DNA of 64,000 nt from Ylistrum balloti (GCF_031769215.1 NW_026782230.1:186001-250000), one strand, 5' to 3'. Shown: positions 1,527 to 44,200, numbered from the stretch's first letter. The notes: a model not told the origin generated them from the letters alone. Made by a program: numbers and translations.

Positions 1527-1615
1527 GCATCATACAGCTGTTTCGTCCTTCTAGGACTAGTCAGTGATGCTACATCATACAGTTGTTTCGTCCTTCTAGG
1601 ACTAGTCAGTGATGG
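1527..1615 (-). ncRNA. Tandem pair of minimal hammerhead motifs, both with core substitution CUGACUA (G8U)
   Basis: Minus strand 1570..1527 reads GCATCA CTGACTA GTCC TAGAA GGAC GAAA CAGCTG TA TGATGC. A second copy lies at 1615..1572 (stem III CAACTG). Same family as 22610. Confidence 0.75.
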
Positions 1616-6351: not shown

Positions 6352-7030
6352 ACTACCAAGTGTCGTTTGATATGTCAGAGATACTACCAAGTGTCGTCCG
6401 ATATGTCAGAGACATTACTATGTGTCGTCTGATATGTCAGAGATACTACCAAGTGTCTTCTGATATGTCAGAGATACTATCAAGTGTAGTTTGATATGTC
6501 AGGGATACTAGCAAGTGTCGTCTGATATGTCACAGATACTACCAAGTGTCTTCTGATATGTCACAGATACTACCAAGTGTCGCCTGATATGTCAGAGAAA
6601 CTACCAAGTTTCGTATGATATGTCAGATATACAGCCAGGTGTCGTCTGATATGTCAGAGAAATTACCAGGTGTCGTCTGATATGTCAGAGATACTAACAG
6701 GTGTCGTCTGATATGTCAGATATACTACCAAATGTCTTCTGATATGTCAGAGATACTAACCAAGTGTCGTCTGATATGTCAGAGATACAACCAGGTGTCG
6801 TTTGATATGTCAGAGATACAACCAAGTGTCGTTTGATATGTCAGAGATACAACCAAGTGTATTCTGATATGTCAGAGATACTACCAAGTGTCGTCTGATA
6901 TGTCAGAGATACAACCAGGTGTCGTCTGATATGTCAGAGATACTAACAGGTGTCGTCTGATATGTCAGAGATACAACCAGGTGTCGTCTGATATGTCAGA
7001 GATACTACCAGGTGCCTTTTGATATGTCCG
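6352..7030. repeat. 31-bp minisatellite (CTACCAAGTGTCGTCTGATATGTCAGAGATA), ~22 copies
   Basis: Direct tandem units; internal inverted repeat TCTGA-TATG-TCAGA. Confidence 0.95.
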
Positions 7031-7721: not shown

Positions 7722-9977
7722 TCTGTATGTAATAAGTATTTATCTGTAACTGTGTATGTAATAATTCAGTAGAACGTATTTATCTGTAACTGTGTAATAA
7801 TTCACTAGAACGTTTTTATCTGTAACTGTGTAATAATTCACTAGAACGTATTTATCTGTAACTGTGTAATAATTCACTAGAACGTTTTTATCTGTAACTG
7901 TGTAATAATTCACTAAAACGTATTTATCTGTAACTGTGTATGTAATAATTCAGTAGAACGTATTTATCTGTAACTGTGTATGTAATAATTCAGTAGAACG
8001 TATTTATCTGTAACTGTGTGTGTAATAATTCACTAGAACTTATTTATCTGTAACTGTGTAATAATTCACTAGAACGTATTTATCTGTAACTGTGTAATAA
8101 TTCAGTAGAACGTATTTATCTGTAACTGTGTAATAATTCACTAGAACGTATTTATCTGTAACTGTGTAATAATTCACTAGAACGTATTTATCTGTAACTG
8201 TGTGTGTAATAATTCACTAGAACGTATTTATCTGTAACTGTGTAATAATTCACTAGAACGTATTTATCTGTAACTGTGTAATAATTCACTAGAGCGTATT
8301 TATCTGTAACTGTGTAATAATTCACTAGAACGTTTTTATCTGTAACTGTGTAATAATTCACTAGAACGTATTTATCTGTAACTGTGTAATAATTCAGTAG
8401 AACGTATTTATCTGTAACTGTGTAATAATTCAGTAGAACGTATTTATCTGTAACTGTGTAATAATTCACTAGAACGTATTTATCTGTAACTGTGTAATAA
8501 TTCAGTAGAACGTATTTATCTGTAACTGTGTAATAATTCACTAGAACGTATTTATCTGTAACTGTGTAATAATTCACTAGAACGTATTTATCTGTAACTG
8601 TGTAATAATTCAGTAGAACGTATTTATCTGTAACTGTGTAATAATTCACTAGAGCGTATTTATCTGTAACTGTGTAATAATTCACTAGAACGTATTTATC
8701 TGTAACTGTGTAATAATTCAGTAGAACGTATTTATCTGTAACTGTGTAATAATTCACTAGAACGTGTAATGATTCACTAGAACGTATTTATCTGTAACTG
8801 TGTAATAATTCACTAGAACGTATTTATCTGTAACTGTGTAATAATTCACTAGAACGTATTTATCTGTAACTGTGTGTGTAATAATTATGTAATAATTGTG
8901 TGTAATAATTCACTAGAACGTATTTATCTGTAACTGTATGTGTAATAATTCACTAGAACGTATTTATCTGTAACTGTGTAATAATTCACTAGAACGTAAT
9001 TATCTGTAACTGTATGTGTAATAATTCACTAGAACGTATTTATCTGTAACTGTGTAATAATTCACTAGAACGTATTTATCTGTAACTGTGTAATAATTCA
9101 CTAGAACGTATTTATCTGTAACTGTGTAATAATTCACTAGAACGTATTTATCTGTAACTGTGTAATAATTCAGTAGAACGTATTTATCTGTAACTGTGTA
9201 ATAATTCACTAGAACGTATTTATCTGTAACTGTGTAATAATTCAGTAGAACGTATTTATCTGTAACTGTGTAATAATTCATTAGAACGTATTTATCTGTA
9301 ACTGTGTAATAATTCACTAGAACGTATTTATCTGTAACTGTGTAATAATTCACTAGAACGTATTTATCTGTAACTGTGTAATAATTCACTAGAACGTATT
9401 TATCTGTAACTGTGTAATAATTAATTAGAACGTATTTATCTGTAACTGTGTAATAATTCACTAGAACGTATTTATCTGTAACTGTGTAATAATTCACTAG
9501 AACGTATTTATCTGTAACTGTATGTGTAATAATTCACTAGAACGTATTTATCTGTAACTGTGTAATAATTCACTAGAACGTATTTATCTGTAACTGTGTA
9601 TGTAATAATTCACTAGAACGTATTTATCTGTAACTGTATGTGTAATAATTCACTAGAACGTATTTATCTGTAACTGTGTAATAATTCACTAGAACGTATT
9701 TATCTGTAACTGTGTAATAATTCACTAGAACGTATTTATCTGTAACTGTGTAATAATTCACTAGAACGTATTTATCTGTAACTGTGTAATAATTAATTAG
9801 AACGTATTTATCTGTAACTGTGTAATAATTCACTAGAACGTATTTATCTGTAACTGTGTAATAATTCAGTAGAACGTATTTATCTGTAACTGTGTAATAA
9901 TTCAGTAGAACGTATTTATCTGTAACTGTGTAATAATTCACTAGAACGTATTTATCTGTAACTGTGTAATAATTAAT
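7722..9977. repeat. 36-bp minisatellite (TTTATCTGTAACTGTGTAATAATTCACTAGAACGTA), ~60 copies
   Basis: Highly homogeneous array about 1 kb downstream of the Lhx2/9 stop; it generates the spurious NYYTVTDKYVLV ORFs. Confidence 0.97.
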
Positions 9978-10980: not shown

Positions 10981-11271
10981 CTAACTGATTGAATTAATGG
11001 AGTTTGTAAACAGATCTGATAAACTACTGCTTGAGTGGTCCGATTCCATATGGCTACTGTGCAGTTCTGATAACGAGGGGGACGAGCTGATGTCAGACAT
11101 AGCTGGGGAGCCGCTGTCAGTCATCTCGGATAGCGATTGGTTCTCTTTGGATTTCTCATCCTCGGGACTGTCTCCTGCTTGACTTCCGCCCTGACTTCCG
11201 CCCCCGCCAGGTTTGTCGTCCTGTTTGAGTACGTTCCTTCTGTACTTAGCTCTAGCGTTCTGGAACCAGAC
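10981..11271 (-). CDS. Lhx2/9: Lhx2/9 coding exon 5 (recognition helix and Ser-rich C-terminus)
   Basis: Absent from the ORF track because it has no start codon; translated by hand. ATTCTACAG|GTC TGG TTC CAG gives VWFQNARAKYRRNVLKQDDKPGGGGSQGGSQAGDSPEDEKSKENQSLSEMTDSGSPAMSDISSSPSLSELHSSHMESDHSSSSLSDLFTNSINSIS, then TAG at 10983-10981. Confidence 0.96.
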   Translation of the reverse strand, partial: VWFQNARAKYRRNVLKQDDKPGGGGSQGGSQAGDSPEDEKSKENQSLSEMTDSGSPAMSDISSSPSLSELHSSHMESDHSSSSLSDLFTNSINSIS

Positions 11272-14200
11272 CTGTAGAATATGTTTAGAAAGAAGATTGT
11301 AAGAAAGGATGTTTATAAGACAGCATGCTCATTAGATATCATTGATTCTAAGTACACCTTGTAATCGACAACCAGAACAACATTCTTAAATGCATTTTAA
11401 AACGTATTTTAAAAAGTGAATGTCGATTGCTTCTTAAAGAAAGGTAACATGATACTGAGTTAAAATTGAGAGAAAGAAGAATCATGTTAGAACCCTCTTC
11501 AGCACGTGTATATTAATTAGAACGTCGATTGGTTGCACGTGCTCTAATGGATGCACCCGCATACGTTTTGGCGCACGCGCACCTCATTGAAGATGGGGGA
11601 ATGCGACAGCAGGTGCGCTGATCGTGGCGTTAGGCCCTTAAAGCAAAACTATCATTAACGGTCCACAGAGACTCTGAATTCTCCAGGAATGTTCAGTTCC
11701 AGACATCTCCTGATCCTCGATCGATAAAGTTTCTAAGAAATATATCAACTGGATGGGTCTATCGAAAAGGCGGTCGTAAGTCGGAGCACACTAAGTTTGG
11801 CCAATAGGCGGTCGTAAGGCAGAGCACACTAACTTAGTGTGACCAATAGATTCATGATTCAAATTTTATTCAAAACTTAAGGACATTGGCCCCTCAGCTC
11901 AGCACAACAACACAACAAATAGAGAATAATTCTCTTTTATATGAAACAATACGTATGATTCTCAGTTTGTTGCTTCCCAAATAAATTTCCTTAACGCACA
12001 TAATTCGTTAATGTTCTGGATATCTAACAACTGACTAGCCTTAAAAACGAGAGGGGGTTGGGTTCAAACAATATCTCACTTTTAGGTTTTGAAATTTACT
12101 AGAGATTAATCCAAAATTACATTCATCTTCTACATTAAGGGAGTTACATTGTTTGACAACGCTTTTTTCTGTCGGCATATTTCTGTATCTCCTTTACTCT
12201 GTAGTCAGTGACTATGAAGGTGGTCATAAGCCAGAGTACAACAACTTAGTGCGGCCAGTGGGCGGTCAGAAGTAAGATGTTACTAACTTAGTATATCGAA
12301 TGGGCGGTCGAAAGTCAGCTTTCATTAGTCCAGCAGAAAGAATTTGTCTCGACTGTGATGTCACAAGATAAAAAGCCTATTAACAAGCCACGTTAATAAA
12401 AGATAACAATATTCAAGTTTTACTGTATATATTTAAATTCTTTGTAGAGTAAATGTTCTCTGCACTTGTGCCTAACTTGGTCTCGATGTTTTACTTTGAT
12501 GCCCCCCCCCCCTCCCCACCCCCTTTCTTATTTTCCTTTCTGGTCGACGCTATTGTTTTATTTGTATTGTTTTGAAACAGCAGTTGGTTGGTATTACAAG
12601 TGCTTTTCATATCAATCTGCGTGATGTTAAATGTAATAAAACTAACCACACAAGCGTACCGGATGGTAGCGATATTTTGGTGGCGGCTTATGCGGGACAG
12701 CAGGGGGTATGTGCTGTGTCTATAAGATGAATTAACTCGTACCTTTGTGTTGACAGTACACTAAGGTATAACATTCGAATACTGTTAAACAATACACTAG
12801 TTTCAAATTCACACCTTCAATTTTGCTTTAAACTTGAAAACATCTTTAAGAAAACACTAAAAGACATGGAAAATCTTAGTTTAAATTCGCGTAAAAGGCT
12901 TAGATCGTGTCAATGCTTGGAACCGAGATATCTTCAAATATTTGATTATCTTATGAGATCCCTGTCGACCAAACACTCATGTTGGCTGGTCTTTGTGTGT
13001 CGGTGATATTCCGCCCACACCAGCCATCATCATGTCAGCTTCGGATCGACACAGGTGTCCAGGCCTGAGGTATCGCTTTCAGAAGTGCTATTTATACGGC
13101 AGTACTGTATTCCTTTTTCCCATGCAGAATATCAACACCTTCATAGGCATGAATCTTCATGGTTTACTTTACCGCCCATGTGCCCTTGTCAATAATGCAT
13201 ACGAAATTTCAAGTTCAGTCAACTTTGTGGCTGTTTTAAAGGACACTTGGAAAAACCACCCTTGGCTAAACATTACAGTATACAAAGTTCCTACCTGTAG
13301 TACGCGTTTGGAGAGACCCGTTTTCTGCGCTAACTGCTTGAGGTCTTTGGCATCCGGGTTATGATTCAGTCCGAAGTACGACTTCATCGTCCTTAACTGA
13401 TGATGTTTAAACGACGTCCGCACTCTTTTCTGTCGCGGAGGTGGATGTGTCCCGTAACCATCTTGCCGCATCATGTCTCCTCCGCGTTCGTGTCCATCTC
13501 CAGGAACCAACCCTGCAACAGCACGGAACGTTTTAATTTTAAATAGAAAAAAGTTAAATAACAGTTCATATATACATGCGCAACTAAACACGGGACACTT
13601 TTATCGTTAGCGCGAATCTTTCTTTAAAAAATAAAGCTTTCAAACGTGTGACCTTTCTTACAAATTTTTGTTCTCAATATGTGAACAATTTTTTAACAAA
13701 AAAAAACTGCACTTTATCGGGAATAATTTTGAAATATATATATTCTTCCTTTTCAACCAATATCAGTTTTATATTCACTGACAAACCATGCGATAACGTC
13801 TTTCCAGTTAGTGATGAGAGAAATGCGTTAATGTGGGCTCGGCTTGTTTATATTGTATACGTTATTTGTCCATCATTTTCAACAACTTGCATAGACTATC
13901 GATGGTTTCCAATCGTAAAATCAACACAAGTACTACAAAGACGGTCTAGTTAAGATGAAACGTGGACTGACATTGGACCGGAGATTGTTTAGTCACAGAG
14001 CGTGGTATTCAATGAATGATAATATACTCCTGCTTTCATGTTCAAAACTATTCCATGTTATCTTTACGGCAGACGAAGAAACAATGGCGTGTGGAGTAAA
14101 CAACCTGCCTACCCCATCAGTACTGGCAGGGAAAATCCAGCAGACCAGGGCAGCATTTACACTCGATTTAAAAACCGTCTTCATTGCAGTGATAGAATCA

Positions 14201-20200: not shown

Positions 20201-23200
20201 AAAGCAAACGAAACTTTTCGAAATATTCCTAGACAATGACTGTGAAACACTGTGAAAGTTGAAATGCTTTTCTTTAGGGAATTTGATGTACAGACAATCT
20301 TCTCTTTTGACGTGTGTGTGTAAAAGCCTTAGTTTAGTGTATAAAAGAAATACTCTGAATTGGTCAGGATTTCCTTTGTCTTCATGTCTGTTCGAGAGTT
20401 CACAGATCGTTTAGTCTCTGAAACACGAATGTCAATCTTTGACGGATGCCATGTCCAACGAATACATTGCGTGTTTGTGCTCATACAAACATTTCCGAAA
20501 TCACAAGACCCGTGATTCCAATATACCGCTTTGGCTATAAAACTTGATAACGTATGATTAACTAAAATTTAGCCCTAGAAACTGACGACGAGAAAAAACC
20601 TCGTGCACATGAACTTATCAAAATACATTTCAAGAATAATTAAAATAAACCTTAGGTCATTTTCGCAACATATGTATATTCAAGAAAAATACTTCCCTTA
20701 TATTATGTTATCTGCTTTTTGTTTTGTATTGCCGACACAACCAGACGAATAAAAAATGACGTGGACCTTTTTTTTCTTCTTTTCTATTTTTTTTTTTTTT
20801 TATTATTATTATCATCTTATTTTAGGTCTGTTTATATGAAATACCAATGCCATTGTGTAAGAAATTGTTTAAGCCTGTCGTGTTTAATTGTCACCAACTG
20901 TTCACTGTTGTCAGTATCACGTCCATTATTCTTTTTCAAAAATTCTATATCTAAGTAAACTGGTAACATAGATGTATATCACGTGATCACACTTCTAGAG
21001 AAACGAAAATGTTTCGTTCTTTGTCATTGTATCTATGCCAGTAAATACCACTGATTCGCAAGAGACCGGATGCATTTAAAAAAAACTTGGATCAAGCCCT
21101 AACGGTTTCTTGGTTCTAAAACCCTTGATAAATCATCCAAAAGATATCCCTACACACTGAAACTCCTCAAAGTCTTCTGTAAATAGCTGAATTACGCCCA
21201 TAGTTTTTACATTACTAAATCGTCTTTTGAGCCACATTCCTTTTTATTTCTCAGTTCGTCCAGAAACGTCCTTATATATAAGCTTCACAGAAAAAAAAAA
21301 TCTGAGAGCTACTCTCGGAGATAGAAAATAATAAATATTTCATACAGCTCAGCATATAAACGATAAAACATCAAGTCAAAACTCGAGCTCTTTGACTGTA
21401 AGAACACACGCTAGTTTGATGCTAGTTGTTTTATCCTTATTAAATAAAACGGAACAATTAGGGTGCATTAGTGAGCCAGAAACCACGTGGGGGAGAGAGG
21501 TAAAATTGTATAGCCATACCCCCTCCCTATAACTACCCCTCTCCCCAGTAAACACCACACACACTGATTCTTACGTCATCTACATACGGGGCTTTTTAGT
21601 ATTCATTGAGGGAGTATTCACTTTCCTTCTCCGGTATCACATAAGTTATATTTGTATTTGACACAACATATTTGATAGTATCATTTATTCTTATATTTTT
21701 TATTTTAAAAAATGTTATTCTAATTACACTGGCAATAAATACTATCAGTACTGACATGGAAAATGCTGGAGATGTACTGAGATATTCTTACTTAACAAAG
21801 TCATTTATCGGGTTTGAAATACACTATATGCAATGTTCTTTTCATCATGTTTATGACTTTGTCTTTGTTAGAGTTTGAACTCCGTTTGACGTAATCATAC
21901 TATCCCTGCTTTAGGTTCTCAAATAAAAGTAGAGTTTTGAGCTCTTGTATACGAACACAACATGACACGGATCAAAGCCGTAATACAAGACGTTAAAGAT
22001 TGGATACAAGACCCGTAAGTGGCCGAAAGCGTTTTGTGGCAGCTAGTAGCTTGGCAGCCTTAGTAGTAAGGTGCTCGACTGTTGTTGACCTCGGATAATA
22101 TATTCACAAGATCTGTAATACCTTCAGAACACAAACATCACGAGTCAGATACAAAGTTCGGTCAAAAAATATAGGCATCAGTACCCAAGACAATATTCAA
22201 CAGCCGCATTATTACATTGATATCATCTTAACTATCCGTGACAATTGATATTCTTAGTCGAATTATACCATTGCTCACTTTACTTTCCAGATATCATCTC
22301 TATTTCTAAATGGCGATTTTTCGTCATGTCATCATGCAGGGATATACTTGTCAAATGTAACAAAAGTAACCTCATCATTTGTATGTCTTTTGCACAATAT
22401 TTGAGACTGCGAGTGTTGGACGTTGTTGATGGACATTTGATCAACGGGGTTTTAATTCATACTGATAGTGGCACGAACAGTCTTTTGAAATTATGCTATA
22501 TTCAAATGTATCAATTTTACTGAATTTTGAGATTAGTGCACTTCTCCATCTTGTTTTTGGACTTTCGACCAATTTTGAGTTTCTTCAAGGTTTCAGATTT
22601 TGGCCTTTAGCATCACTGACGAGTCCTAAAAGGACGAAACAGCTGTATGATGCAGTTTGGCTCTACTGTATCTTATACAAAATTTGTATTGAAAGGTGTT
22701 ATTTAGTTGTATGTCTTTTGAATGTTTTTTTCACGACGTAAATAATCTTGCACACGTATTTGATTCAATTCCATATACAATGGCTATATCATAGAATATT
22801 TGGATTTTATCAATCTCATATTAAAAGGAAACATTTTAATCTTAATTAATCGATGTCATGAACTTGGATGAAACATTTTACCAACATTCGATAGAAACGG
22901 TAAATCATCAGTTCAAATTGACAAATGTGGATGACTGAAGTTGAAGCAACAATGACATCAAGACAAGCTGAGGCACCCATATGCACGTGACCTTTTCACA
23001 ATTAGGTAAGGCAAACTAATGACAAAGCCATTCACAAAAAATGTAGGTCAAGAGTTGCTGCGGGGTTCACACAGTCAAAGTTTCACCTACATTCAGGGGC
23101 GGAAGGATATCAGAAGTACACAGACAAAGTACCGCCATCCTTTAAGATCCTATCAGCGGATGTACATTTACGACTTCCGGAGCAAGTGGTTATTTTAAGA

Positions 23201-26200
23201 CAATTTCGAGAAATGATCACGTATGTTGATTTCTAAATGTTATCGCAAAAATAACAACTGTGATATAAAGATATGCGATACAACATCGGCAGTTATATTT
23301 AGATATAAAGATACAAATGAGGCACACGTATAAGGTGCTGGATTATAATGAGTTCCATAAACATTTGATAATCACATTGACGTATAATTGTTGATATCAT
23401 ATCGCAGATATAATCTTAGAATGTTACAAACATTCACTGGGAGTCTTTAGGAGAGAAAGGAACGACAATCCATCAGCACTTACACCCTTCTAAACTTCAA
23501 ATGTCACGTTCCGTTCTTACACACGCCCACGGTGTTATTGTGATTTTTCATTGTGGGACTATATTTACCAAGGAAATGGGGTTTATGGACATTTTGTCTC
23601 CGTAAGATCACTAGGCAAGACATACGTCACTTCAATTGAAGATTTGACAACACGTGTCTACGTCTATTAGTCAACACTTATCGACTACATATGTCTTACT
23701 CTATTAGTCAACACTTATCGACTACATATGTCTGACCTTATTCATCAACGTGGGCTGAATTGCTATCTCGTGTATCTTTCACAATCTGTCGACGAGATTT
23801 AATGTCGTGTAGGTCATCACACTGACGTTAAAACAGATTTATAATTTGGTTTTTATTCGTTAATTGATTGCGTATTGTATTTCTATAAACCACCTGTTCG
23901 TGGTATTGCATAACATCCACACAATCTTTCTAAAATGATAGTGTGGGTGGAATTAACCGGTGAATTGTATTCTTCGACAGTCCCACTGAAAATGGTAGAG
24001 TTCCTGACAAAGCCTTCTTCGCACGTCGCTAAAGAAGATTTATACCGGTTCTTCGTTATCGCTTTGATCACTAGTAGGTAAACACGTGCTTAACTATGCT
24101 TTGTAGCATATACTGTCATGTTACCTAGAACGTGTTACCAACTGAATATTCAAGAATTCAATTTAATCAACTGATCAGCAGTAACACTTATCTCAAGATT
24201 TAGAATTTTTAAAAAAATGTTCAAAGAGAATGCTTTTATCATCTAATACCATTCTGGTACTGTTTTGGCGGAAGAAACTCACTCCGATGGGTTACCATCA
24301 TCTCACCATATCAGTGATGTATATATCTACAGTCATATCAGTACCTTAGGTCATTCTGTTTAGATACAGCCGGTAACATTCTGCGGTCAAATCAGAAATG
24401 TTTATTCCGCTGGACTGACCATAAACTACATCGCCAGTGTCGGAATACAACTCACGAGACTTCCATAGCTGGAGCCCGTCTATGTTAATCTTATCTTTGG
24501 CCCCGCCCTCCGAGGTTTTCCTAGCCCCGTCCCTGACAGGCCCGATAACGACGTCGACGCCGTATCAGGCTGCTGCGACAAGTCTCCAGGGGTGACTATA
24601 AAACTAGAGTTTAAGTGTAAATTTGTTGTTGCTCGGGGTTATCACAAGGTTCAAGTGCTGTAATACCTCACGCTGCAAGCACAGATAGCATATCAACCGA
24701 CCAAACGTTTGTGTAGCGTACTTAGTGAGAGTTCAGAGAGTATAATTCCTAGTAAAACAGAGTTCTCAGAGAGTAAAAATTAATGAATATCACACTATCT
24801 TGTGTTATACTATTTTTGCTATACCACAGAATCACTTGCTAACAGTGAACTATCACTCGACATATCCGGACCTCGTCTTAAAATCTTTCCATAAATCGAG
24901 ATGACAGGTGATGTTCACTCAGGTAACCTATAATAACAGATATGCTAACAAAATCAAAGTTCTCACTCAACAAAACCGTAGTTCTCTCTCCAAATTGATT
25001 AAACGAGTGCAAATTATTTTTTTAAAGTACTTACATGTGAAACACTCAAGAGATACAAAGAAAAAAGATATATTGCAGAGTAGTAAGTTATACAAATATC
25101 CATAGCTGTAACTATGTACTATGGTTAGTCGAGCGGGAAATAGCTGTAACCATGTACTATGGTTAGTCCAGTGCAATATAGCTGTAACCACGTACTATGG
25201 TTAGTCCAGTGGAATATAGCTGTAACCATATACTATGGTTAGTCCAGTGGAATATAGCTGTAACCACGTACTATGTTTAGTCCAGTGTAATATCGCTGTA
25301 ACTATGTACTATGGTTAGTCCAGTGTAATATAGCTGTAACTATGTAATATGGTTAGTCCAGTGGAATATAGCTGTAACCATGTACTATGGTTAGTCCAGT
25401 GTAATATAGCTGTAATCATGTACTATGGTTAGTCCAGTGGACTATAGCTGTAACCATGTACTATGGTTAGTCCAGTGGACTATAGCTGTAAATATGTATT
25501 ATGTTTAGTCCAGTGGAATATAGCTGTAACCATGCACTATGGTTAGTCCAGTGGAATATAGCTGTAACCATGTACTATGGTTAGTCCAGTGGACTATAGC
25601 TGTAAATATGTATTATGTTTAGTCCAGTGGAATATAGCTGTAACCATGCACTATGGTTAGTCCAGTGGAATATAGCTGTAACCATGTACTATGGTTAGTT
25701 CAGTGGAATATAGCTGTAACCATGTACTATGGTTAGTCCAGTGTAATATAGCTGTAACTATGTAATATGGTTAGTCCAGTGTAATATAGCTGTAACCATG
25801 TACTATGGTTAGTCCAGTGGAATATAGCTGTAACCACGTACTATGGTTAGTCCAGTGGAATATAGCTGTAACCATGCACTATGGTTAGTCCAGTGGAATA
25901 TAGCTGTAACCATGTACTATGGTTAGTCCAGTGGAATATAGCTGTAACCATGTACTATGGTTAGTCCAGTGTAATATCGCTGTAACTATGTACTACGGTT
26001 AGTCCAGTGGACTATAGCTGTAACCATGTACTATGGTTAGTCCAGTGGAATATAGCTGTAACCAGGTACTATGGTTAGTCCAGTGGACTATAGCTGTAAC
26101 CATGTACTATGGTTAGTCCAGTGGAATATAGCTGTAACCATGTACTATGGTTAGTCCAGTGGACTATAGCTGTAACCATGTACTATGGTTAGTCCAGTGG

Positions 26201-29200
26201 ACTATAGCTGTAACCATGTACTATGGTTAGTCCAGTGTAATATAGCTGTAACCATGTACTATGGTTAGTCCAGTGGAATATAGCTGTAACCATGTACTAT
26301 GGTTAGTCCAGTGGACTATAGCTGTAACCATGTACTATGGTTAGTCCAGTGGAATATAGCTGTAACCATGTACTATGGTCAGTCCAGTGGACTATAGCTG
26401 TAACCACGTACTATGGTTAGTCCAGTGGAATATAGCTGTAACCACGTACTATGGTTAGTCCAGTGGACTATAGCTGTAATCATGTACTATGGTTAGTCCA
26501 GTGGAATATAGCTGTAACCATGTACTATGGTTAGTCCAGTGGAATATAGCTGTAACCATGTACTATGGTTAGTCCAGTGGACTATAGCTGTAATCATGTA
26601 CTATGGTTAGTCCAGTGGACTATAGCTGTAACCACGTACTATGGTTAGTCCAGTGGACTATAGCTGTAACCATGTACTATGGTTAGTCCAGTGGACTATA
26701 GCTGTAAATATGTACTATGGTTAGTCCAGTGGACTATAGCTGTAACCATGTACTATGGTTAGTCCAGTGGAATATAGCTGTAACCATGTACTATGGTTAG
26801 TCCAGTGGACTATAGCTGTAACCATGTAAATTTGAGAATCTGTTATAAACAATAATGTAGAAAAACATAAATTCAATTTCGTCCAAATCTTTGATGTCCA
26901 AATTTATTGGTGAGGAATTTTGTTTTCAAAATTATCTTATAAATTTTAATTTGAAATAATTAGAAAAAATTAGAATGCCATCTTTCAAATTGAATACTGA
27001 AGTTGGGAGATGTGATAACAAAGAAAGAAATGACTGGATTTGTACTTTTTGTAATAATATCGACATTCTTCAGATTTAAGGAAGTGTTTCATTAAGAAAC
27101 GTTATTCTAATAGACCTAACATGTTGAAATCTGTCCAACTTATGGAATCTATAAACAAAAGCGAATTATCAATATGCGTAACAAGAAAAGTAAGGATTGA
27201 AATATACACGGGTAATATGTTGAATTCCCTCTACACAATGGTAAATGATGAATGTAGGGGTTGCGGTTGAGCATTTAGTATTTTATTACTTGTTCACTTA
27301 CATTATGTATATATAATTTCATATTTAACTGATGATCCCCAAGGCTTATATTGATACAATAATTCATAATGTAAAATGGTTCTGTTGTACAATATATAAT
27401 TCACTCTTCTTGAAAAGAGATAAATGTACTCTTATGTACTCTGATACATCCGGAGGGTTTCATGGATGGGTATATTTTTAATTTCGTCAACACAGTATGA
27501 ATGTGACAAGATTTCTTCCTTCAATTTTCATTAAGAGTGTTAATATAAATTCAAACTAATTCTGAATAAATATGAAAAAATAAAATCATCCTCAAAGTTT
27601 GTAATAGCGTTGTACTTGAGCAATGTTGACCTGCTTCTAATAAAGTATTGTTTATGTGTACATACTAACCGTTCACTAATGTGAACGGATATTAAGACCA
27701 ATCAGAGCTAATAGGGGAACAATGTTTATAGTAGAAATACAACTCTACCAATTAGTCCACGGAACTAAAGTACATACAAATGAACACCACACAATATTTT
27801 GTCCGACAGCAAATGAACTTTTACAATACACGTATCGACATTTGATGAGGTAAATATGTATTTTATGAACCAGGTAAATTTGATATCAACCGACGCGACG
27901 GTTAATTCTCGAAGATTACGTTATATACTACAAAAAGGTCAAGTTGCCCAATCTGGCAAACATAACTACTGTTGACAATTGAAGACTTTGATTGTGTCAA
28001 AGAACTGGCAAATTTGATTTTCAGAGAAACAAAAAATCGTTTAGTAAATTATTTTCGATGCCAATATTACCACAACTCTTGACCTAGAATTCATTAGTTC
28101 TGGCTGTTGTAATCACTCCATATATTTTTTTTCTGCTGTAGATCCTATCTACACATCTAGGTTCACGATATTGTGACTACGTCATCAGGACATTCAAGTA
28201 GGCCACACTCCCTGATTATCTAATGAACATTTCTAATTAGTTCTAGTTTTAAGCGATTAAGTCTGGCATATGACAGATGGATTAATAAAGTCATTTACTT
28301 TCTACCTAATCAACAACACAGGAAAATCTAACTAAGCGGCTAACGTTATTAAGTAGACTTTTTGTGTCGCGAAGCAGTGTAGAGAGTATTAGATCATCCC
28401 TAGATCCCGTCCACTGCAGCTCTGCTTCATCAACTTATCACACACGGCGACGAGCATTGGTTTTGTTTTCAATTAACAACATAATTTTTAAATCTCCGTG
28501 CACTTGATCATACGAATATCTATTGCATAATCGAATCACGTAAGATAATACAATTTATGCTAACAAAGCCAGAAAATGCTACATTGATAAATTTGAACGT
28601 TTGCATCTGAAGGGAAAATCTTTGAAGAATAAAACCAATACTGGTTGTACGTTGTTCCTAGTGTAACGGAAAACTAGATTAGCGTTTATATCTTTTATTT
28701 ATATATTTTTTGAAATTCTACTCCAATGTTTTGAAGTTTTCTTTCAATAGATCAGCCCTATCTTGGATTTAGCCTATTTTGTTACTATAGCATCAGAGGA
28801 CAGCTTCTGTCGGCATTTCTATCCAATGTAATGATAATCTACACAACGTTGCCATCAACTGCAGGTTTCTGAATTACAATATGTCTAGTTAATTCTACTT
28901 TTTATTAATTAGAATAACTTTTATTGTCAGAAATATATTAAGCATGGTGAATTCTTTTAATATTATGTAATGTACCTAACATACCGTTGTATTTGATGTT
29001 ACTTGTACAAACAATGTTTATTACATTCAATCTGTATTAATGTTACAAATCTTCAAATAAAAAAATCTACTTTTACAATATGCTATGTAATAACTTGGTC
29101 CAACTACTACTTTTTTAGATGATTTCTTTATTAGTGATGAACCTGTCATCAGGAATTGGACGCCGGCCTAAACAACAACTACTGACCACATATACAGTTT

Positions 29201-35200: not shown

Positions 35201-38200
35201 AAAGGTAGCCAATTTTTGTACGTAAACTGAGCCCTCTGTACGTTGACAAGTTAATCTGGGTATTTTATATGTACATACATTCCTAAAACAAAAACACTTG
35301 CTATTGACTATCGGAGCCGGCGTTTGACTATGCGTCGGCCTACATCTTAATGCTCCGTCTTAATCTACAACTAAAATAACGTTTTCATCGTTACTTACGT
35401 CAAATGTGAACAGATAAGATTTAGTGTACTTAATTTAAGATATCTATCACAGACGAATGATTAGGGAATCGATATATATTATCACTTGAAATGATATTTA
35501 ACCAGTCAAGATCTTTGTGGATTAAACAGCATTTAGTTGGGGAAAATCTGATGACACCTTCTGACTACCAATCAAAACGTGTTTTGAAATAACATGGCAG
35601 TTATTTTTATTTTATACATAATTTTCCGATTGTATCAGCTCCGCTGGATCATGTAATTCAAAACACGTTTCGTATCATATGACGATAAGTCGGGCCCAGA
35701 TAAAATCTCTTCATTGAAATCTCGGCCTCCTTTTACACTGATAGCGTCGAAGATTTCTGTCTTCGTGGTAAGATTAGTTTGTTTATTTAATCAAATCATA
35801 TTTTTTTCTATCCTGGCGTATATAATAGTGATAACAGTCTTTGCCACCTAATAGTTTTATATGTACAGTTCTGTCATCGTGTCTATTCGATCACCTACAC
35901 ACTGTGTAAATTGATGAAACACATACGGACACTTATATATTATAATCATATTATGTTATCCCCTGTTAGTGTTATTGATGACTGGACGATATCCTTCATA
36001 AAATTATTCTGGTAGACATTACATAGCAATCAATACTTGAATCCATTATGATCCGACATATCATTAATAGTAATTGTAGCAGTGGATTTTATTTCAGCTA
36101 AATTCCTATAGGAAAAATGAACTATTTGACACTTATAGATATCTTAAAACGGCTGTCCATATCGTGTTAAATATCATAACATAACACGAGGAGAGTCAGG
36201 CGAGTGCTGTGGAAATACTGCAGTGTTAATTAAGCGTGTGCCGGTCTGATTTGGCGCGAGGAATGCCGGACTTATCAGGCTCCCTCTCCAGCCGACTCAG
36301 CAGGCTTGAACAAGGCCTTGATAAACCAGGGTGACAAACGAATCACAGAGTACAGAGATGCTAAAACGTTCAGGGGCCAATGTCCGTGAAATGGAGGAAC
36401 AAAATTAGCCAAAAGAAGACATAATATCCAGATTATTATACCAGAAATTATTTCCAAATGACACAAATTCACATTGAGCCACATTTTGTGTTTGTAAAGA
36501 ATATGATTTTCTATCATCAGAAAAATATCTCCGTTTAATTCCTTTATCAATTTTTAATATGAAAATGTTCTTAATGGCACAATTCTTTTACCATTGCAGA
36601 GTCACAGAAACGACAAGTATAGAATAGGAATCTCTATACATGGAAGGTCGTTTCTTTTACCATCAATTCCCTCACAGCACCTTATAGCAACATTTTAATC
36701 TGTGGTTTGAATTAATTTTTTCTGCAAACTAAATACTAGAAATCTGTCAAAATTACTATACAATTATGCAAATCTAACGATTTACTATAACTAAGTCGTA
36801 CTGTATGCCTATTTATAGCATTAGAATACTGCAATGAGAACTCGAGGGTTTTTTTAGCAATTGCAAACACATTGATTTTTCTTAAATATTTTCAATGAAG
36901 AGTTCACAACATATGCTCTTTTCATCGATTCTGAGCAAATAGAAGCGTAGTTCCTGCCATGAAAAAAAACTATACATTTGTAATTGAATACTATTTTTGT
37001 ATAAATCGAATCCCAAGAGAAATGACGATGTGAACCGCCTGCCAGTCGAGTGTAACTACTTCAGATGGTATCAATAGAGCTCCATACAATATTTATAAAT
37101 CCTATTTGTTTTAACGATAGGAAATGGAAAGGACAACACCCTTTCGTTGGCCTAGCAAATATTTACCGTGGTCAATGTAAAGATTCGACGGATACCAGAC
37201 CAAATCCGAACAAATACCCTACAGCAATTGCACCATATTGACTCAGTAATTATCACCATCTCGCTCCTCTGGTGCTAAACGCTACGATGCAGTTCCGTCA
37301 CAAAATGCCCGTGAATATTAATATCTCTTAATTTGCATTGAATTAACATATGCGCCTATTCAGAAATTCAATTACTGTTAATTTTGTAACCTTTACTCGA
37401 TTGAAATTTCATTATTTCCAATTATGTTTTTGAATTTGGTGTTTTTATGATACTGGTGGATGGCGGTTATACCAACACAGTGCATAAATGATAAAAACCA
37501 AATAGGCTGAGAGATCACAAAATTGCCTGGAAATAATACAACACTCAAAGGAAGGAAGTGAAGTGCATTCACGATGTTGAGTGAAAAAATCAGGGTTATG
37601 AACAGAAAAGGAAGAGACTGAATCTAATGCGAATGAACCTCTCCAAGTCCGAAGGTCTACGAACCCTCCAGATGCCGATGTGGCCAATTTTAATGAAGTG
37701 TATGATCACGTGGCTGGCGTATGAATGAAGTGAAGTGATGCGACTCACCCATGCCTGGAGGACACCCTTCTCCATCCGCGATAGGATTCTTTCTCTTCCT
37801 AGGTCGTCCCTTTTGTACCGTTCCGACACCATTGTAGTAAGGGAAATGCCCCCCAGACGAACACGGGAGTCCTGGAGTCATTCCGTGAAAAAATTCGCCT
37901 TGGAACAATAGTTCATAATCCGTTCTGCAATAAACTAAATTTTCTTTCATTCCGAATTGGTCTCCCGTAGTAAGAGTTTTATTGCATGCCATACATGTGA
38001 AACACGTGATGTGATAGACCCAGTCCCGTGCTCGCATCACTAGTTCATTAGCAGATATTCCTAACTGACACCTTGCACACCTTTTCACAGCAAATCTTCT
38101 GAAATAAATAAAAAAAAATATGTAAGCATATTTCAACCTTACTGCAAACGCATTAGTGTATGAAGAATAATATATGTTATCCGTTTTGTTGATCATATTT

Positions 38201-41200
38201 CATAAATGACACCATTTCTGTCGTAAAATTTTTCTGGGACAACAGATAATGGATTCACACAACTGGTTATAATGTATCGGATCATAGTGTATTTATCAAT
38301 TTACAAACATGATATGCTTGACATTAATGAAGAGAATATGATTGAATCGCTGACAGCATCTTTTTTATTTATTTTACAACAATTTCAAAATGTTTTTGAT
38401 TAAGTTACATTGAGTGCTTTAGTCTCTTGCGGTGTCATTTTTAAAGGCCGGCTGAGTACGAAGGTTCTTAATACTGTGCAAAGAAACTAACCAGGGATTC
38501 GAACCGTGATCGCCTAGGTGAGGGGCGTTACCATTTTTTATGGATAGGATATCTAATAAAAAGTGTTGAATATCAGGAAGAGTGAAATCACTTATAATAT
38601 CACAAGGACTGACGATTTTGAGAGTTAAGTATTTTCATACAGAACATTTTTATATGAAATAATTTTTGCTGAAACATTTTGAACTGATTCAAACTAGTTT
38701 GTCCGCAAGGGATACGTTTACTCTGTCATTTATAAAAGTCTATAACATACATCTACATCAAAATAGAACAATTCACTTAGTTTTGTTGAAATAATAGATT
38801 TTATGGTATTCTCTGATATCACACGACGTTGTGAGAAGTATGAACAGGGAGTGTGATAACGACAAACACATGACGGAATCCTATAGCTTTGATGAACCAG
38901 CAAAAGTCAATCTAAAACACCAATGGGTTAGTAGGAGAACTATTTCAAATCTTTATCACGTAATGTTATATATAGTGGGAATGGAGATCAAACGAATAAG
39001 AGGCAGTATTGATATGTTAATAGTTGCCATGATGGATTAATCTGTAGTGCAGAAGGAGTAAAAAGTGTTGCGTCCAACATTTAGACTGATTGCAGCCATA
39101 ATCGCCGCCCAATGTGAATATGTGGACTCTTTGTAATGCTAGGATTTCAAACCTAGTAAAGAGCTTAATATATGTAGGTAACGATGTTTTAATATGAATT
39201 TGCATATGACAGAAGTTTACATGAAGGATATCAAGAGGAAAAAAATCATAAAACAGAAAAACGGAAATGCGTTGAAAATATAAAATCAAAAGTCAAACGC
39301 ACGTGTGGAAAAAATGACTGTCTGGATCCAGTTAAAGTTGTAAGAGTGAGGACTACCAACCACAGACCTCACCAACATGTGTTTACCCTCAAAAACAACA
39401 AAAGAGACAAGGGAGCAACAGAAACTAACAAAATGGCCAAAAGATTCATATTCTTATAGGTTTTCTCGTTCCGGATCAAACAAAACATATTTCAGTCCTG
39501 CCCCTGTTGAAGGCTGGGTACACGGCCCCTCCGTGTACAAACCCTCCAAAACAGGAATTAGGGGTTCAAAGACACACGCGCGCTCTGCCAGATGCATATA
39601 CCCAGAGAGAGCCAGATGTCTTTAGCCAGTGATCTGGGAGCATTGTACGCATGCCTTGGTCTCAATCTAAGGCTGCACCTGCAAACAATGGATAATCTAT
39701 AGGATATAGAACTTAAGAGTACAATTATACAGGGAAAAAAATTCAGATCGGAGGTACGGTTTTGTGCTAATGCCGAATCCAAGTTACGAGAAAGCAACAC
39801 ACAAGTGTCTTTAAATAAACAAATGGTCAATGATTTCGGGCCATCGCTCCTAAAATATCAGATAATTTACAGTGACATTCATAATCTGTCGTCCTAATGT
39901 CACTATTGTTACCGTGTGATAAAATTTTAGAAAACGGTTGTTGCCATAGAAACATGACAGTAGAGCACGTGACATGCGATAACTAAATAGGACGATTTTA
40001 TTCTGTTTATTGAATATTTGGAAATTAAAAGGGAAATTCTGATTAAACATTAGGGAAGGATATTTTCAATAGAAGTGTGACGACAAATAAAACGTTTAAA
40101 TATCTTACAACGTTTTACATATTGACATACAAAATCCTCCAATATGCAAGATCTACAGATATAAAAGGGATGATATTGTGAGCTGTATGTTTGATATGAT
40201 AACTCCTTCTTTTCAGTTATGCAATCAAAATTTCATATTAATGCTTCAAAATAATTGAAATATTCAAATTAAAAGAAGAAATTATATTTTATTTGCGTCA
40301 TTGGAAACATCGAATATATTTGTGTCAATTACAAAATATTTTACGGAAATAAAATATTGCTGTATAAAGCTTACTGTACTTATGTATCTGGTAGTTTGAA
40401 TGGCCCTAAGACGGGTAAATAGTGATGAATTACCTTATCACGCGAGGCGCGGGATATAAACACTGTTGATTACAATCCAAATACGGATCCTTTGCTGGTT
40501 ACAATACATTGTTAATGCATTACATCGGGACGTACAGCTAATATTTACCAAGGAGTTTGGTCAATATTGGTTTAGCAACCAAAAAATCGCAGGTGCCCAT
40601 CTCATAACGGATTCAAACTCTCAGACAAAATCAAGCACTTCATTCACTGTATTACACAGACGATATATCGACTTTCATAGCTCAAAAGAAATCAAACATT
40701 TTATCCAAAATTCATTACTACCGTGTCCAATATTATCGAGCTGTTTCTGTGGTTAATTAATGGTGTGTGTGTAATTTTAAATGTAATATTTCCGATATAT
40801 CTGTGAAAATTTCCTGTGTACATAATCCCGTGTGTGTAAAATCTCAGGCTCTATCCGATATGTGGGCCTGGTATACAGGTGTTTACAGGAATGTTTACAA
40901 TAATATATACAGTGGAAATACAACACACTATTGATACAAACACACATTCATAAACAATTCTTGTCCTATAAAATAATCGAAAAGGCCTACCCAAATATTC
41001 TAGGGGTATTTGACCAAACCAAGACAGGGTTTCTGAATGGCCTTTTTTGTATTATAAGACGAGAAGGGATTCCAAAATCCCATAATTACTCATCATAGTA
41101 TAAGTGGCACAACCAAAGGGGCATTCAGTACTAATTTGATATACTTGTGGAAAGTACCTTTTCATACAAATTTAGAGTTAGATACAGTACAGACAAACAA

Positions 41201-44200
41201 TGAATAAAACTGCATCATACAGCTGTTTCGTCCTTTTAAGTATATTCTTGAAATTCTGTACATGTAATATTTTGTACAATCTTCAACACTGAAGGTGGTT
41301 AGATCCCGAGGTCTGCCGTAACCTGCATGCTACGTTTCACTCCATGTACTTGACCTTTTTCTAAAATTATTCGATATATAAAAATCAATCAAATGATTGA
41401 AATCAAATTATTAATCGTTTTACGGTTAATAATGACATGTATTGTAATCAAAGATTATTAATCAAAACTCACAGAAAATAGATTAAACACGGAGTTATGT
41501 TTCCCTCCAATTGCTATTTTGCTATTTCTTAAACATTACATTCCTTATGGGGATGGCGACGTACCGATTAGACTTATACCAAGGTATGCATCCGGAATAA
41601 AGAGAGAATAAAAAAATATACACATGAACATCAACAAAGTAATCTATGTATTTCATTTCGAACAATTCCTGGCACAGCAGGATTCCGGATAGCTACAATC
41701 CGACCTACCGGAACGTATTAGAATGGACCACCATTACAATGTTTACACATCGTCATATAACTTAATTCGGGATACGCTCAGTGTTAAATAAACGTTATAA
41801 TACGGAATGATTAAGCTTTTATAATTTTGACACAAGAGGTTAAAAGGATTACTGTAGGTCAATCCCTAACATCTTGTCGCCAAATAGCTGGCCTTTTGTA
41901 TCGAAGATCACGCCTATAATTATACGCATAATGCAGTCTTTACAGTTTCTGAAAGCAAACCAAACGCAATGAACTTAACTTTATAATTCCGAGTTAGGGG
42001 ATAAGAGCATTTTAAATTTCATAGTTGTGGCACTTGAATTGCACTTTTTTCTATAACAAATTACATTTAAAATGAATATTATTTTCTGTGTATTTTATAC
42101 AGTTTTTAGTTCGTTTCAGAATTTTTAATTGATTTGGGTACAATTTCCATTACATCTTGGACAGGTTACCTCAGTACAGTCTTTGATAGAAGATTAGAAC
42201 ACAACTAAACAGGATTTGTCAAAGATTGGTCGACCATATCGAAATATGACGTAATATTGTGGTAAGAACCTTCACAGCGGAATAATTAAAGATTTCATTT
42301 GATTATGATATATAACGGGTTTTGTTACAAGAATCTTATAAAAATGTACATCATAGCTTGAATTTTATGGAGAATCTTTCAATCAGATTTTATATTTTAT
42401 TCCTGTAAAATTGATTTCTGGCAAAGAAATGTATCAACATTACAAGCAACGCCTAGATATTATATTGATATTATATGCAAATTAACATTTTTAATCTAGT
42501 TTAAATTTTCTGAGTAAATTGGCACGATGACCACGTTTGTTATCGACCCACTAACGATAATTAGGGATGTATTTTGGTGTGTTTGTGCCTTGGTGTCTAG
42601 GTATAACCATATTCCATTCTTAAAGTTTAATTCTGGCATGTCGTATTTTAAATATTTCATCAACCAAAATGATTGAGATTTTCTTCAAAGCCTCGACACA
42701 AACATGTTAATAAGCATAAAATTATAACTCGGTTTGCTTCCGAACGTACTCTTGTTCACATTGCTATAACTAGATCACGACAGCCTGGTAGCACTTTTAA
42801 TCGGACTGGTTGGCAGTAACATAATTTGCATACGTTGTACGATCTAGCACCATCCTCAACATATTCCACCTTTCATGACGAAGAATAAACACAGATTGAA
42901 TTTTGGTCTAGAAGTTTGTACACGCCGCAACAACAAACTGAATGAGAGAAGAGGGTCGTTAGGCCAGGAGTATCAAAGAGGGCGAAACAATGAAAGAATT
43001 GGATATTGAAAGGCTGGCTAAATTAACGGCCACGCCCCCTCCTTGTGTTGTCAAGATTCCGTCGACTAGCCGTTTGATTAGACTCCTGTCATACGCGTGT
43101 CTTCTAGGGGCTTAATATTCGCAAAACAAGCGTGCACATGCATGTGCGTTCTCTTCCATGTACCGCCATGGTCGAGTGCCGACAATTCCAATTTACTTAG
43201 CGTAGAACATGCGGTATGCCTCCTGGATGTAACAATGCTATCTAAATGCATGGAAAAACATGTTGTATATTAATTATCGGGTAAGACACATCCGTCTGTC
43301 TCAAAATACGTCGTTAACATTATTTTTTATTTTACGCGCGCCATTTAAATGTTTCCCGTCTGATTTCAGTATAACGGTATATCATCTGGTTTTTTTGATA
43401 GAATATTTCATTAACATCATAATAATGTGTCGAGCGAAAATGGGGATGCTCATAAATGCTGTGGGTATTTATCACAGTGATGCTATATCACAAAGTTAAA
43501 CTCCAAAAGGTTCTACAGTTAAACGAAATAGTTGAAGCAGTACACAACTAAGTTTTCATTGATACCTGTCAATCATCGAGAGACAAACGAGTTAAACACA
43601 CAAATTATATCTGATATCCATAAATATTTCATGAAGTATTTTGATAATAAATAGAACAGAAAAATAATCTAGAAACGTTTTCCTTCTTGCAGAATTAAGA
43701 AAAAAACATCGGACACGCATTGACACAGCGTCACCGGCATGTATCGCCAAGAAAGTTTTGGAAATCAGCGAAAAACGAATCATCATATTTCAGAAAGCAC
43801 CGAACTCCCTCCCCAAGCATTGATGACTACTGGCTGGTAAATCAATTTTCTGGAGTTCATACAAGTGCATAGCCCCGATAGAATTCTCTTACCAACTGTC
43901 ATTTTCCGAACTTTGAATTCATGCGAAGGAAAATCAAGTTCGCTCTGACGTTTCCTGTAGCCCAAGCCGTGCTTTTCTTGCCCCGAGACGATTTGAACCA
44001 ATGACAGCCTGCCTCCTGTGTCAATAAAACCGCGAATGTTTCGGAATCTCGCACCTGGACCCCAGTTTTAGACAAAAATAGTGCTGTCTGCTTTGTTTCT
44101 ATCGTTGTTGGTTTGTATTTCCGAGAAGGAATACCATATTCGAACTATCTTCATATTTCTAAAACAAATTCATTATATTTGTAATAATAAAGATCATTGG

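What the first reader, a model, noticed from the sequence alone, without database searches (positions are those of the whole stretch)
22585..22680. Intact minimal hammerhead ribozyme hidden in Lhx2/9 intron 3
Seen: a complete type-I core, GCAUCA/CUGACGA/GUCC-UAAAA-GGAC/GAA/ACAGCUGU/A/UGAUGC, with a possible distal extension of stem I (GGCC/GGCU) beyond an internal loop. No ORF is nearby. Known: minimal hammerheads with a palindromic, unstable stem III mark Penelope-like element terminal repeats and are reported to self-cleave as dimers. Inference: a solo-terminal-repeat or non-autonomous retrozyme-like element. It is antisense to Lhx2/9, so it could only act on an antisense transcript, possibly defining its end.
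Basis: partly seen in the sequence, partly recalled or inferred. Interest (0 to 1): 0.8.

Follow-up and report, generated by a model that had tools for sequence, protein, structure and literature searches.

The report
Solo hammerhead ribozyme repeat copy
The 44-base self-cutting RNA motif is real and complete, but it is one lone copy of a short mobile repeat present in tens of thousands of copies in this bivalve genome, so it is most likely an ordinary transposon relic in an Lhx2/9 intron and not a device of the gene.

Summary
Window 22610-22653 (+) matches Rfam Hammerhead_1 (type I) at 36.7 bits, above the curated cut-off of 34 (E 1.4e-5).

It is not unique. The window holds four loci of the same roughly 150-220-bp repeat, with five hammerhead units; only this unit is intact. 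In a DNA run of the same species, about 5,800 contigs pile on the motif. Summed depth there is about 279,000 against about 11 for the flanks, and dozens of 45-nt "goes back" joints show tandem hammerhead arrays across the genome. No reverse-transcriptase or other ORF lies beside any copy.

The host gene is Lhx2/9-like, on the minus strand. The motif lies antisense, between the LIM2 exon and the first homeobox exon.

As a monomer the RNA is predicted to misfold (-13.6 against -7.8 kcal/mol for the hammerhead fold). As a dimer it forms the classic double hammerhead (-33.3). No second unit lies in cis, and no RNA data exist.

Verdict: a solo, non-autonomous Penelope-type or retrozyme-like repeat copy, a known kind. 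The scan has already flagged this same repeat type many times on other pieces of this genome. Interest is low.

The parts
22610..22653 (+). Complete type I hammerhead ribozyme motif (44 nt). Stem I 22610-15/22648-53; core CUGACGA 22616-22; stem II 22623-26/22632-35; loop II 22627-31; GAA 22636-38; palindromic helix III/loop 22639-46; predicted cleavage after A22647.
   Evidence: Rfam RF00163 at 36.7 bits, above the gathering score of 34, E 1.4e-5; sequence read; energies.
22602..22662 (+). Possible distal extension of stem I: GGCC 22602-05 pairs with GGCU 22659-62 across an internal loop (UUUA / AGUUU).
   Evidence: Present in the minimum-free-energy fold of 22598-22666. The same pairing is possible in the copies at 47.4 kb and 1.5 kb, with one G-U/G-C difference. 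Weak support only.
22577..22720 (+). The repeat copy that carries the ribozyme: a leader of about 33 nt, the hammerhead, and a 3' tail. Homology may run on to about 22775. It lacks 12 nt (AATTCATTGTTT) that the family has just after the hammerhead.
   Evidence: Pairwise local alignments give 22582-22720 against 47479-47332, 81% identity. Multiple alignments. The family flank consensus comes from loose ends in run X1.
1527..1615 (-). Related copy: two head-to-tail hammerhead units (1572-1615 and 1527-1570, period 45). Both read CUGACUAG (G8 to U), so both are predicted dead. The shared 3' tail runs to about 1448.
   Evidence: (TRF period 45, 1.9 copies, 97% matches). Rfam reads the unit junction as a permuted type III hit at 34.3 bits, below the gathering score of 48.5. 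G8 changes abolish cleavage (PMC11167929).
47332..47479 (-). Related copy on the gene's sense strand. The hammerhead at 47405-47449 has a C-A mismatch in stem II, an extra A after GAA, and a destroyed helix III and cleavage site. Predicted dead.
41156..41238 (-). Related copy on the gene's sense strand, 5'-truncated inside loop II. It has no CUGANGA box and no 5' strand of stems I and II. Dead.
37693..38199 (-). Stop-free stretch holding the LIM2 exon of the Lhx2/9-like gene; it bounds the intron on its upstream side in the gene's direction.
   Evidence: Pfam LIM, E 6.7e-18; sequence.
13172..13600 (-). Stop-free stretch holding the first homeobox exon of the Lhx2/9-like gene; it bounds the intron on its downstream side.
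   Evidence: Pfam Homeodomain, E 5.1e-11; translation; best solved-structure match is Lhx9 (2dmq), E 1.9e-24.

Best explanation
Window 22577-22720 (+) is one solo copy of a very abundant, short, non-coding retroposed repeat of a bivalve genome. The conserved heart of that repeat is a 44-nt type I hammerhead ribozyme. In the repeat's active source copies the ribozyme presumably processes multimeric or tandem transcripts: two neighbouring units pair their palindromic ACAGCUGU segments into an 8-bp helix III and cut after GUA. This is the scheme described for Penelope-like elements and animal non-LTR retrozymes, which are thought to borrow the Penelope reverse transcriptase and endonuclease. The copy here landed in the intron between the LIM2 exon and the homeobox exon of an Lhx2/9-like gene, in antisense orientation. 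It has no partner unit in cis and is predicted to misfold as a monomer. It most likely does nothing for the host; its core is intact because about one copy in five would be at this level of decay. Shown: motif, family membership, abundance, tandem arrays elsewhere, absence of an ORF, gene context, predicted energies. Inferred: retroposition by a Penelope-like enzyme, lack of cleavage as a monomer, lack of host function.
For: The hammerhead is real. Four loci with five units share a leader, the hammerhead and about 70-130 nt of tail at 81-91% pairwise identity. One is 5'-truncated, as retroposed copies often are, and one is a 45-nt-period dimer. In DNA run X1, 5,802 contigs were laid. The bin holding the motif has summed depth of about 279,000 against about 11 in unique flanks. 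More than 25 'goes back 36-51' joints, mostly 45 and 42, show tandem arrays. Loose-end consensus reproduces the family flanks, and the locus itself is present in X1, where contigs from both flanks run into the motif. Five units per 64 kb points to the same order of abundance. No Pfam reverse-transcriptase or GIY-YIG hit was found in 10 stop-free stretches beside the copies, and no ORF of 120 aa or more lies in the intron. Predicted monomer minimum free energy is -13.6 against -7.8 kcal/mol for the hammerhead fold, and the dimer minimum is the double hammerhead at -33.3. One intact unit of five matches a neutral expectation of 4-21% for about 30 critical sites at 5-10% decay. The literature describes this kind of element: PMC4209133, PMC7229834, PMC6765202 and the bioRxiv preprint 10.64898/2026.07.22.740005.
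Against: No autonomous Penelope-like element carrying this hammerhead was seen, so the link to Penelope enzymes rests on the literature and on architecture. Helix sizes match the 'canonical' retrozyme hammerheads, and the coral and mussel ones do cleave as monomers (0.8 and 0.1 per min, PMC7229834). This copy could therefore be active alone despite the thermodynamic prediction. The 44 nt differ from the neighbouring dimer's units by only 2 bases, while the flanks are 10-20% diverged and carry a 12-nt deletion. That could hint at constraint, though subfamily structure explains it equally well. The element's ends and target-site duplications could not be fixed. No RNA data exist, so transcription of the plus strand is unknown.
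Confidence: 0.85

Rival explanations
1. Co-opted element: the intact antisense hammerhead cuts an antisense (plus-strand) non-coding transcript of the Lhx2/9 locus and so sets its 3' end or stability.
For: The core is complete. It is the only intact unit of five in the window and the only one antisense to the gene. Domesticated intronic hammerheads exist in amniotes (PMC6155905).
Against: No RNA run holds the locus. The monomer is predicted to misfold and no second unit lies on the plus strand in cis. It belongs to a family of an estimated 10^4-10^5 units. One of five intact is what neutral decay predicts. The known domesticated cases are sense-oriented and conserved across species; the first is not met here and the second is untested.
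Confidence: 0.04
2. Terminal repeat (pLTR) of a full or recently deleted autonomous Penelope-like element at this site.
For: Penelope-like elements carry hammerheads in their pLTRs, often in tandem (PMC4209133, PMC6765202).
Against: No ORF of 120 aa or more lies within 9 kb on either side. Flanking stop-free stretches give no reverse-transcriptase or GIY-YIG Pfam hit. No second repeat copy lies within 18 kb. The shared homology is only about 150-220 bp.
Confidence: 0.03
3. A genuine retrozyme source locus: the unit is transcribed, cleaved with partner RNAs in trans and circularised into a small circular RNA.
For: Helix sizes equal those of invertebrate non-LTR retrozyme hammerheads, and such RNAs are abundant in mussels (PMC7229834). 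The region is low in GC and has no ORF.
Against: Retrozyme sources are head-to-tail arrays; this is a single unit with a private 12-nt deletion. A fold of 22560-22780 is not unusually stable, z -1.6.
Confidence: 0.05
4. A chance match with no ribozyme ancestry.
For: None beyond the short length of the motif.
Against: E 1.4e-5 above the gathering score, homologous flanks in three other loci, and thousands of matching contigs.
Confidence: 0.01

Closest known systems
Animal non-LTR retrozymes with canonical type I hammerheads (Cervera and de la Pena 2020, PMC7229834; Li, Clavereau and Pollet 2026 preprint, 10.64898/2026.07.22.740005)
   Same: Type I hammerhead with helix I 6 bp, helix II 4 bp and helix III 2 bp capped by a palindromic tetraloop. 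Non-coding, AT-rich and very high in copy number. Found in molluscs. Monomer 'offspring' copies are scattered through genomes, introns included.
   Different: This locus is a single unit, not a head-to-tail array of a 170-400-bp unit. In this genome the tandem unit is often the 45-nt hammerhead alone. Circular-RNA expression was not testable.
[quoted passage not shown]
   Same: Palindromic, very short helix III implying action as a dimer. Units occur directly in tandem. Most copies are solo and dispersed, away from any full element. Variability within one genome is high.
   Different: The 2014 min-HHR consensus has no helix III, a helix II of 6-8 bp, an extra base between positions 9 and 10.1, and a helix I of 4-5 bp. 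None of these holds here. No reverse-transcriptase/endonuclease ORF is adjacent.
Schistosoma Sm-alpha SINE-like elements and newt satellite 2 hammerheads (the Rfam RF00163 seed type; PMC6765202)
   Same: Nearly the same core and stem II (GUCC/GGAC) as the Rfam consensus, carried on a short non-autonomous repeat.
   Different: No tRNA-like Pol III head was detected (ARAGORN found no genes). The carrier sequence is unrelated.
Domesticated intronic hammerheads of amniotes (RECK, CTCL, DTNB; reviewed in PMC6155905)
   Same: A type I hammerhead inside an intron of a protein-coding gene, derived from retroelement hammerheads.
   Different: Those are in sense orientation, conserved across classes and effectively single-copy. 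This one is antisense and a member of a huge repeat family, and its conservation is untested.

Membership tests
Hammerhead ribozyme, type I (Rfam RF00163) | Covariance-model score at or above the curated gathering score | tested here: met
   36.7 bits against 34, E 1.4e-5, full-length model match.
Hammerhead ribozyme, type I (Rfam RF00163) | Conserved core C3 U4 G5 A6 N7 G8 A9 / G12 A13 A14 / A15.1-U16.1, and an NUH cleavage triplet | tested here: met
   CUGACGA, GAA, A22639 paired with U22646, triplet GUA with cleavage after A22647.
Hammerhead ribozyme, type I (Rfam RF00163) | Three helices, with the open end at helix I | tested here: met
   Helix I 6 bp, helix II 4 bp, helix III only 2 bp plus an AGCU loop. 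The hammerhead fold scores -7.8 kcal/mol against -13.6 for the monomer's alternative fold.
Hammerhead ribozyme, type I (Rfam RF00163) | Mg2+-dependent self-cleavage | not testable with these tools
   Needs in vitro transcription of monomer and dimer.
Penelope-like element min-HHR (sensu PMC4209133) | Helix III absent, helix II 6-8 bp with an extra base between positions 9 and 10.1, helix I 4-5 bp | tested here: not met
   Helix II is 4 bp with no extra base, helix I is 6 bp, and a 2-bp helix III is present.
Penelope-like element min-HHR (sensu PMC4209133) | Palindromic positions 15.2-16.2 and loop 3, allowing a dimeric active fold | tested here: met
   ACAGCUGU is self-complementary. The cofold minimum is the double hammerhead with an 8-bp helix III at -33.3 kcal/mol, against 2 x -13.6 for two monomers.
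Penelope-like element min-HHR (sensu PMC4209133) | Lies in a pLTR flanking a reverse-transcriptase / GIY-YIG ORF | tested here: not met
   No ORF of 120 aa or more in the intron. No reverse-transcriptase or GIY-YIG Pfam hit in flanking stretches of any copy. Most published copies are also solo, so this does not exclude a Penelope origin.
Animal non-LTR retrozyme | Canonical type I hammerhead on a short, non-coding, low-GC repeat | tested here: met
   (GC 0.36).
Animal non-LTR retrozyme | Head-to-tail tandem repetition of the unit | tested here: not met
   Single unit at this locus. The family does form tandems of the 45-nt hammerhead unit elsewhere.
Animal non-LTR retrozyme | Expressed as linear and circular unit-length RNA | not testable with these tools
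   No RNA run holds the stretch.
Domesticated intronic hammerhead (amniote RECK type) | Sense orientation in the host pre-mRNA | tested here: not met
   The motif is on the plus strand; the LIM and homeobox exons are on the minus strand.
Domesticated intronic hammerhead (amniote RECK type) | Conserved at the orthologous site across species | not testable with these tools
   No related genomes are at hand. The copy is present in a second sample of the same species only.

The most novel reading that the evidence does not exclude
The copy is transcribed from the plus strand and, by pairing its palindromic helix III in trans with RNAs from the many other copies, self-cleaves at 22647/22648, so it shapes an antisense RNA that modulates Lhx2/9. 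More broadly, host selection may tolerate intact units only in antisense orientation within this developmental gene: all three sense-strand copies in and just after the gene are dead.
Probability: 0.03. Interest if true: 0.6.

Novelty: new member of a known kind. Interest (0 to 1): 0.15.

Why it matters
For Lhx2/9 biology it matters little, because the motif is a transposon relic. It adds one verified data point: a bivalve genome carries a very large family of compact type I hammerheads, an estimated 10^4-10^5 units, often as 45-nt hammerhead-only tandem arrays, scattered through introns in both orientations. That family, rather than this locus, would be the object worth a genome-wide census (intact fraction by orientation, link to an autonomous Penelope-like element, circular RNAs). 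It sits between the published 'min-HHR of PLEs' and 'non-LTR retrozyme' categories.

Tried and rejected
1. Public metagenome scans with two patterns of the motif. The first found nothing. The second found one contig, L001, whose two hammerheads have long helix III and lie between ORFs; this is an unrelated phage/bacterial type.
2. RNA evidence. No RNA run holds the stretch. The only holder, X1, is kept as DNA contigs, so starts, ends and strand of any RNA could not be seen.
3. Penelope protein remnants. Pfam on 10 stop-free stretches beside the four copies gave nothing relevant. Only about a third of the window's stop-free stretches were scanned, so a remnant elsewhere in the window is not excluded.
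4. A 328-bp tandem unit, suggested by a 14-nt exact repeat at 22379 and 22707. Alignment showed no further homology and nhmmer gave E 0.76, so I treat it as chance.
5. tRNA-like SINE head: ARAGORN found none.
6. Rod-like retrozyme fold of 22560-22780: z -1.6, not remarkable.
7. Target-site duplications: the element's ends are too uncertain with four decayed copies, and no convincing duplication was seen.
8. Covariation in the stems: the five units are nearly identical in the stems, so this is uninformative.
10. The Lunse, Weinberg and Breaker paper is not held, so it is cited only through PMC6765202.

Full report
OBSERVATION. Stem I is 6 bp (22610-15 with 22648-53). The CUGACGA box is 22616-22. 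Stem II is GUCC/GGAC, closed by loop UAAAA (22623-35). GAA is 22636-38. The self-complementary octamer ACAGCUGU is 22639-46, followed by A22647, so the cleavage triplet is GUA. A scan of the whole window, both strands, against all 4,227 Rfam families gives one hit at gathering level: RF00163 Hammerhead_1 (type I), 36.7 bits against a cut-off of 34, E 1.4e-5, matching the whole model. The motif is therefore real and far beyond chance. The proposed distal GGCC/GGCU extension of stem I exists and appears in the minimum-free-energy fold. Its only comparative support is one G-U to G-C difference between copies.

IT IS A REPEAT. Self-comparison of the window shows three more loci with the same leader, hammerhead and tail.
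- 1527-1615 (-): two head-to-tail units with a period of 45 nt. TRF reports 1.9 copies at 97% matches. Both units read CUGACUAG, a G8-to-U change. G8 changes abolish cleavage (PMC11167929).
- 47332-47479 (-): a stem II mismatch, an inserted A after GAA, and a wrecked helix III and cleavage site.
- 41156-41238 (-): truncated at the 5' end inside loop II.
The shared part runs from about 33 nt before the hammerhead to about 70-130 nt after it. Pairwise identity is 81-91%. The copy under study spans about 22577-22720. It lacks 12 nt that the other copies have just after the hammerhead. Only one of the five units is intact. With about 30 critical positions and 5-10% decay from the source, 4-21% of copies would stay intact, so one in five needs no special explanation.

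ABUNDANCE. One public run, X1, holds the locus. It is DNA of the same species and is stored as contigs; unique flanks have depth 9-14 and about 0.5% differences. Contigs from both flanks run into the hammerhead, so the insertion is also present in that sample. In all, 5,802 contigs were laid, nearly all on the motif. The 167-nt bin that holds it has a summed depth of about 279,000, against about 11 beside it. More than 25 joints 'go back' 36-51 nt, mostly 45 and 42; these are tandem arrays of the hammerhead unit. Loose-end consensus reproduces the family's leader and its 12-nt stretch. Summed contig depth is not a copy number. It does agree in order of magnitude (10^4-10^5 units) with five units per 64 kb in this window. 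Earlier notes of this scan, unchecked by me except as stated, report the same thing on many other pieces of this genome. They describe it as bivalve or scallop-like, and they include 45-bp hammerhead minisatellites in introns in both orientations.

SURROUNDINGS. The gene is on the minus strand.
- LIM1 exon within 50171-50416.
- LIM2 exon within 37693-38199 (Pfam LIM, E 6.7e-18).
- Homeobox exons within 13172-13600 and 10984-11328.
The homeodomain's best solved-structure match is Lhx9, at E 1.9e-24 against 6.6e-7 for the next protein, so 'Lhx2/9' is supported. The hammerhead lies in the roughly 24-kb intron between the LIM2 exon and the first homeobox exon, antisense to the gene. 'Intron 3' assumes an exon 1 upstream of the LIM1 exon, which I did not verify. 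No ORF of 120 aa or more lies in that intron. Ten stop-free stretches beside the four copies gave no reverse-transcriptase or GIY-YIG match. ARAGORN found no tRNA-like head.

MECHANISM. Taken alone, the 44-mer prefers an alternative fold, at -13.6 kcal/mol against -7.8 for the hammerhead fold. In that fold the CUG of the core box pairs with the CAG of helix III. Two copies together have as their minimum the double hammerhead, in which the two octamers form one 8-bp helix III (-33.3 kcal/mol, against -27.2 for two separate monomers). This is the dimer mechanism described for newt, viroid and Penelope-type hammerheads (PMC4209133; PMC6765202, citing Forster et al. 1988 and Lunse et al.). In a 45-nt tandem array the same pairing forms in cis. 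Rfam even reads the junction of the dimer at 1535-1585 as a permuted type III hammerhead, at 34.3 bits, below its cut-off. The copy at 22610 has no partner on its strand anywhere in the window, so a plus-strand transcript would carry a lone unit. One caution applies. Invertebrate retrozyme hammerheads of the same helix sizes do cleave as monomers (coral 0.8 per min, mussel 0.1 per min; PMC7229834). Inactivity is therefore predicted, not shown. No RNA run holds the locus, so whether the plus strand is transcribed at all is unknown.

COMPARISON WITH THE KNOWN. The architecture (I 6 bp, II 4 bp, III 2 bp plus a palindromic tetraloop, no extra base after A9) is that of the 'canonical' metazoan type I hammerhead found in animal non-LTR retrozymes (PMC7229834). 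It is not that of the helix-III-less min-HHR defined for Penelope-like pLTRs (PMC4209133). Direct tandems of the bare hammerhead and dispersed solo copies are features reported for Penelope-type hammerheads. [quoted passage not shown] The copy fits that continuum. It works like these elements. At this locus it fails two locus-level criteria: the tandem array of retrozymes and the adjacent ORF of Penelope-like elements. It is best called a solo copy of a non-autonomous hammerhead-bearing repeat. It does not resemble the domesticated intronic hammerheads of amniotes, which are sense-oriented and conserved (PMC6155905).

RIVALS. Co-option as an end-maker for an antisense RNA cannot be excluded without RNA data and sister genomes. 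Nothing supports it beyond the intact core. All three sense-strand copies in or just after the gene are dead and the single antisense copy is intact, but this is four loci, and other scan notes (untested by me) list intact sense-strand copies in other introns. A full Penelope-like element at the site and a chance match are both rejected.

VERDICT. The core of the interpretation (a solo, retrozyme-like or Penelope-type repeat copy) is supported. The functional suggestion is unsupported. This is a new member of a known kind, already met many times by this scan on other DNA of the same genome, and interest is low.

Noticed in passing
window 1527-1615 (-), and about 1673-1690 (-): A head-to-tail pair of 44-nt hammerhead units (period 45), both with the same G8-to-U change. 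Either the duplication came after the inactivating mutation or the source already carried it. About 60 nt upstream lies a collapsed remnant, CGAAAC joined to TGACTAG.
   Followed up: partly
window 47332-47479 (-) and 41156-41238 (-): Two dead copies of the same repeat lie in the intron between the LIM1 and LIM2 exons, in the gene's sense orientation. With the pair at 1.5 kb, every sense-strand copy in the window is inactive and the only intact unit is antisense. The sample is far too small to show selection.
   Followed up: partly
window 25102-26828; also 2132-3656, 6351-7028, 7736-9974, 49697-50178, 51979-52364, 59978-62140: The window is rich in long minisatellites with periods of 26-43 bp and 10-62 copies. 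One lies in the same intron as the hammerhead and one abuts the LIM1 exon. The 36-bp array at 7.7-10 kb creates long stop-free stretches with spurious sub-threshold KKLCAg1 Pfam hits.
   Followed up: no
run X1 laid on window 22538-22704: Contigs of a DNA run pile on the hammerhead at about 25,000 times the unique depth, with many 45-nt and 42-nt back-joints. The genome-wide family of hammerhead-only tandem arrays is the more interesting object.
   Followed up: partly
L001 151-210 and 1092-1151 (metagenome contig Ga0315295_10477680): Two hammerheads with a long helix III, about 940 nt apart, flanking coding sequence. The second reaches Rfam Hammerhead_1 at 36.6 bits. They look like the phage/bacterial type and are unrelated to the window's family.
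   Followed up: no
window 22379-22392 and 22707-22720: An exact 14-nt direct repeat, TTGTATGTCTTTTG, 328 bp apart, the second copy inside the repeat's tail. No further homology around it; probably chance.
   Followed up: yes
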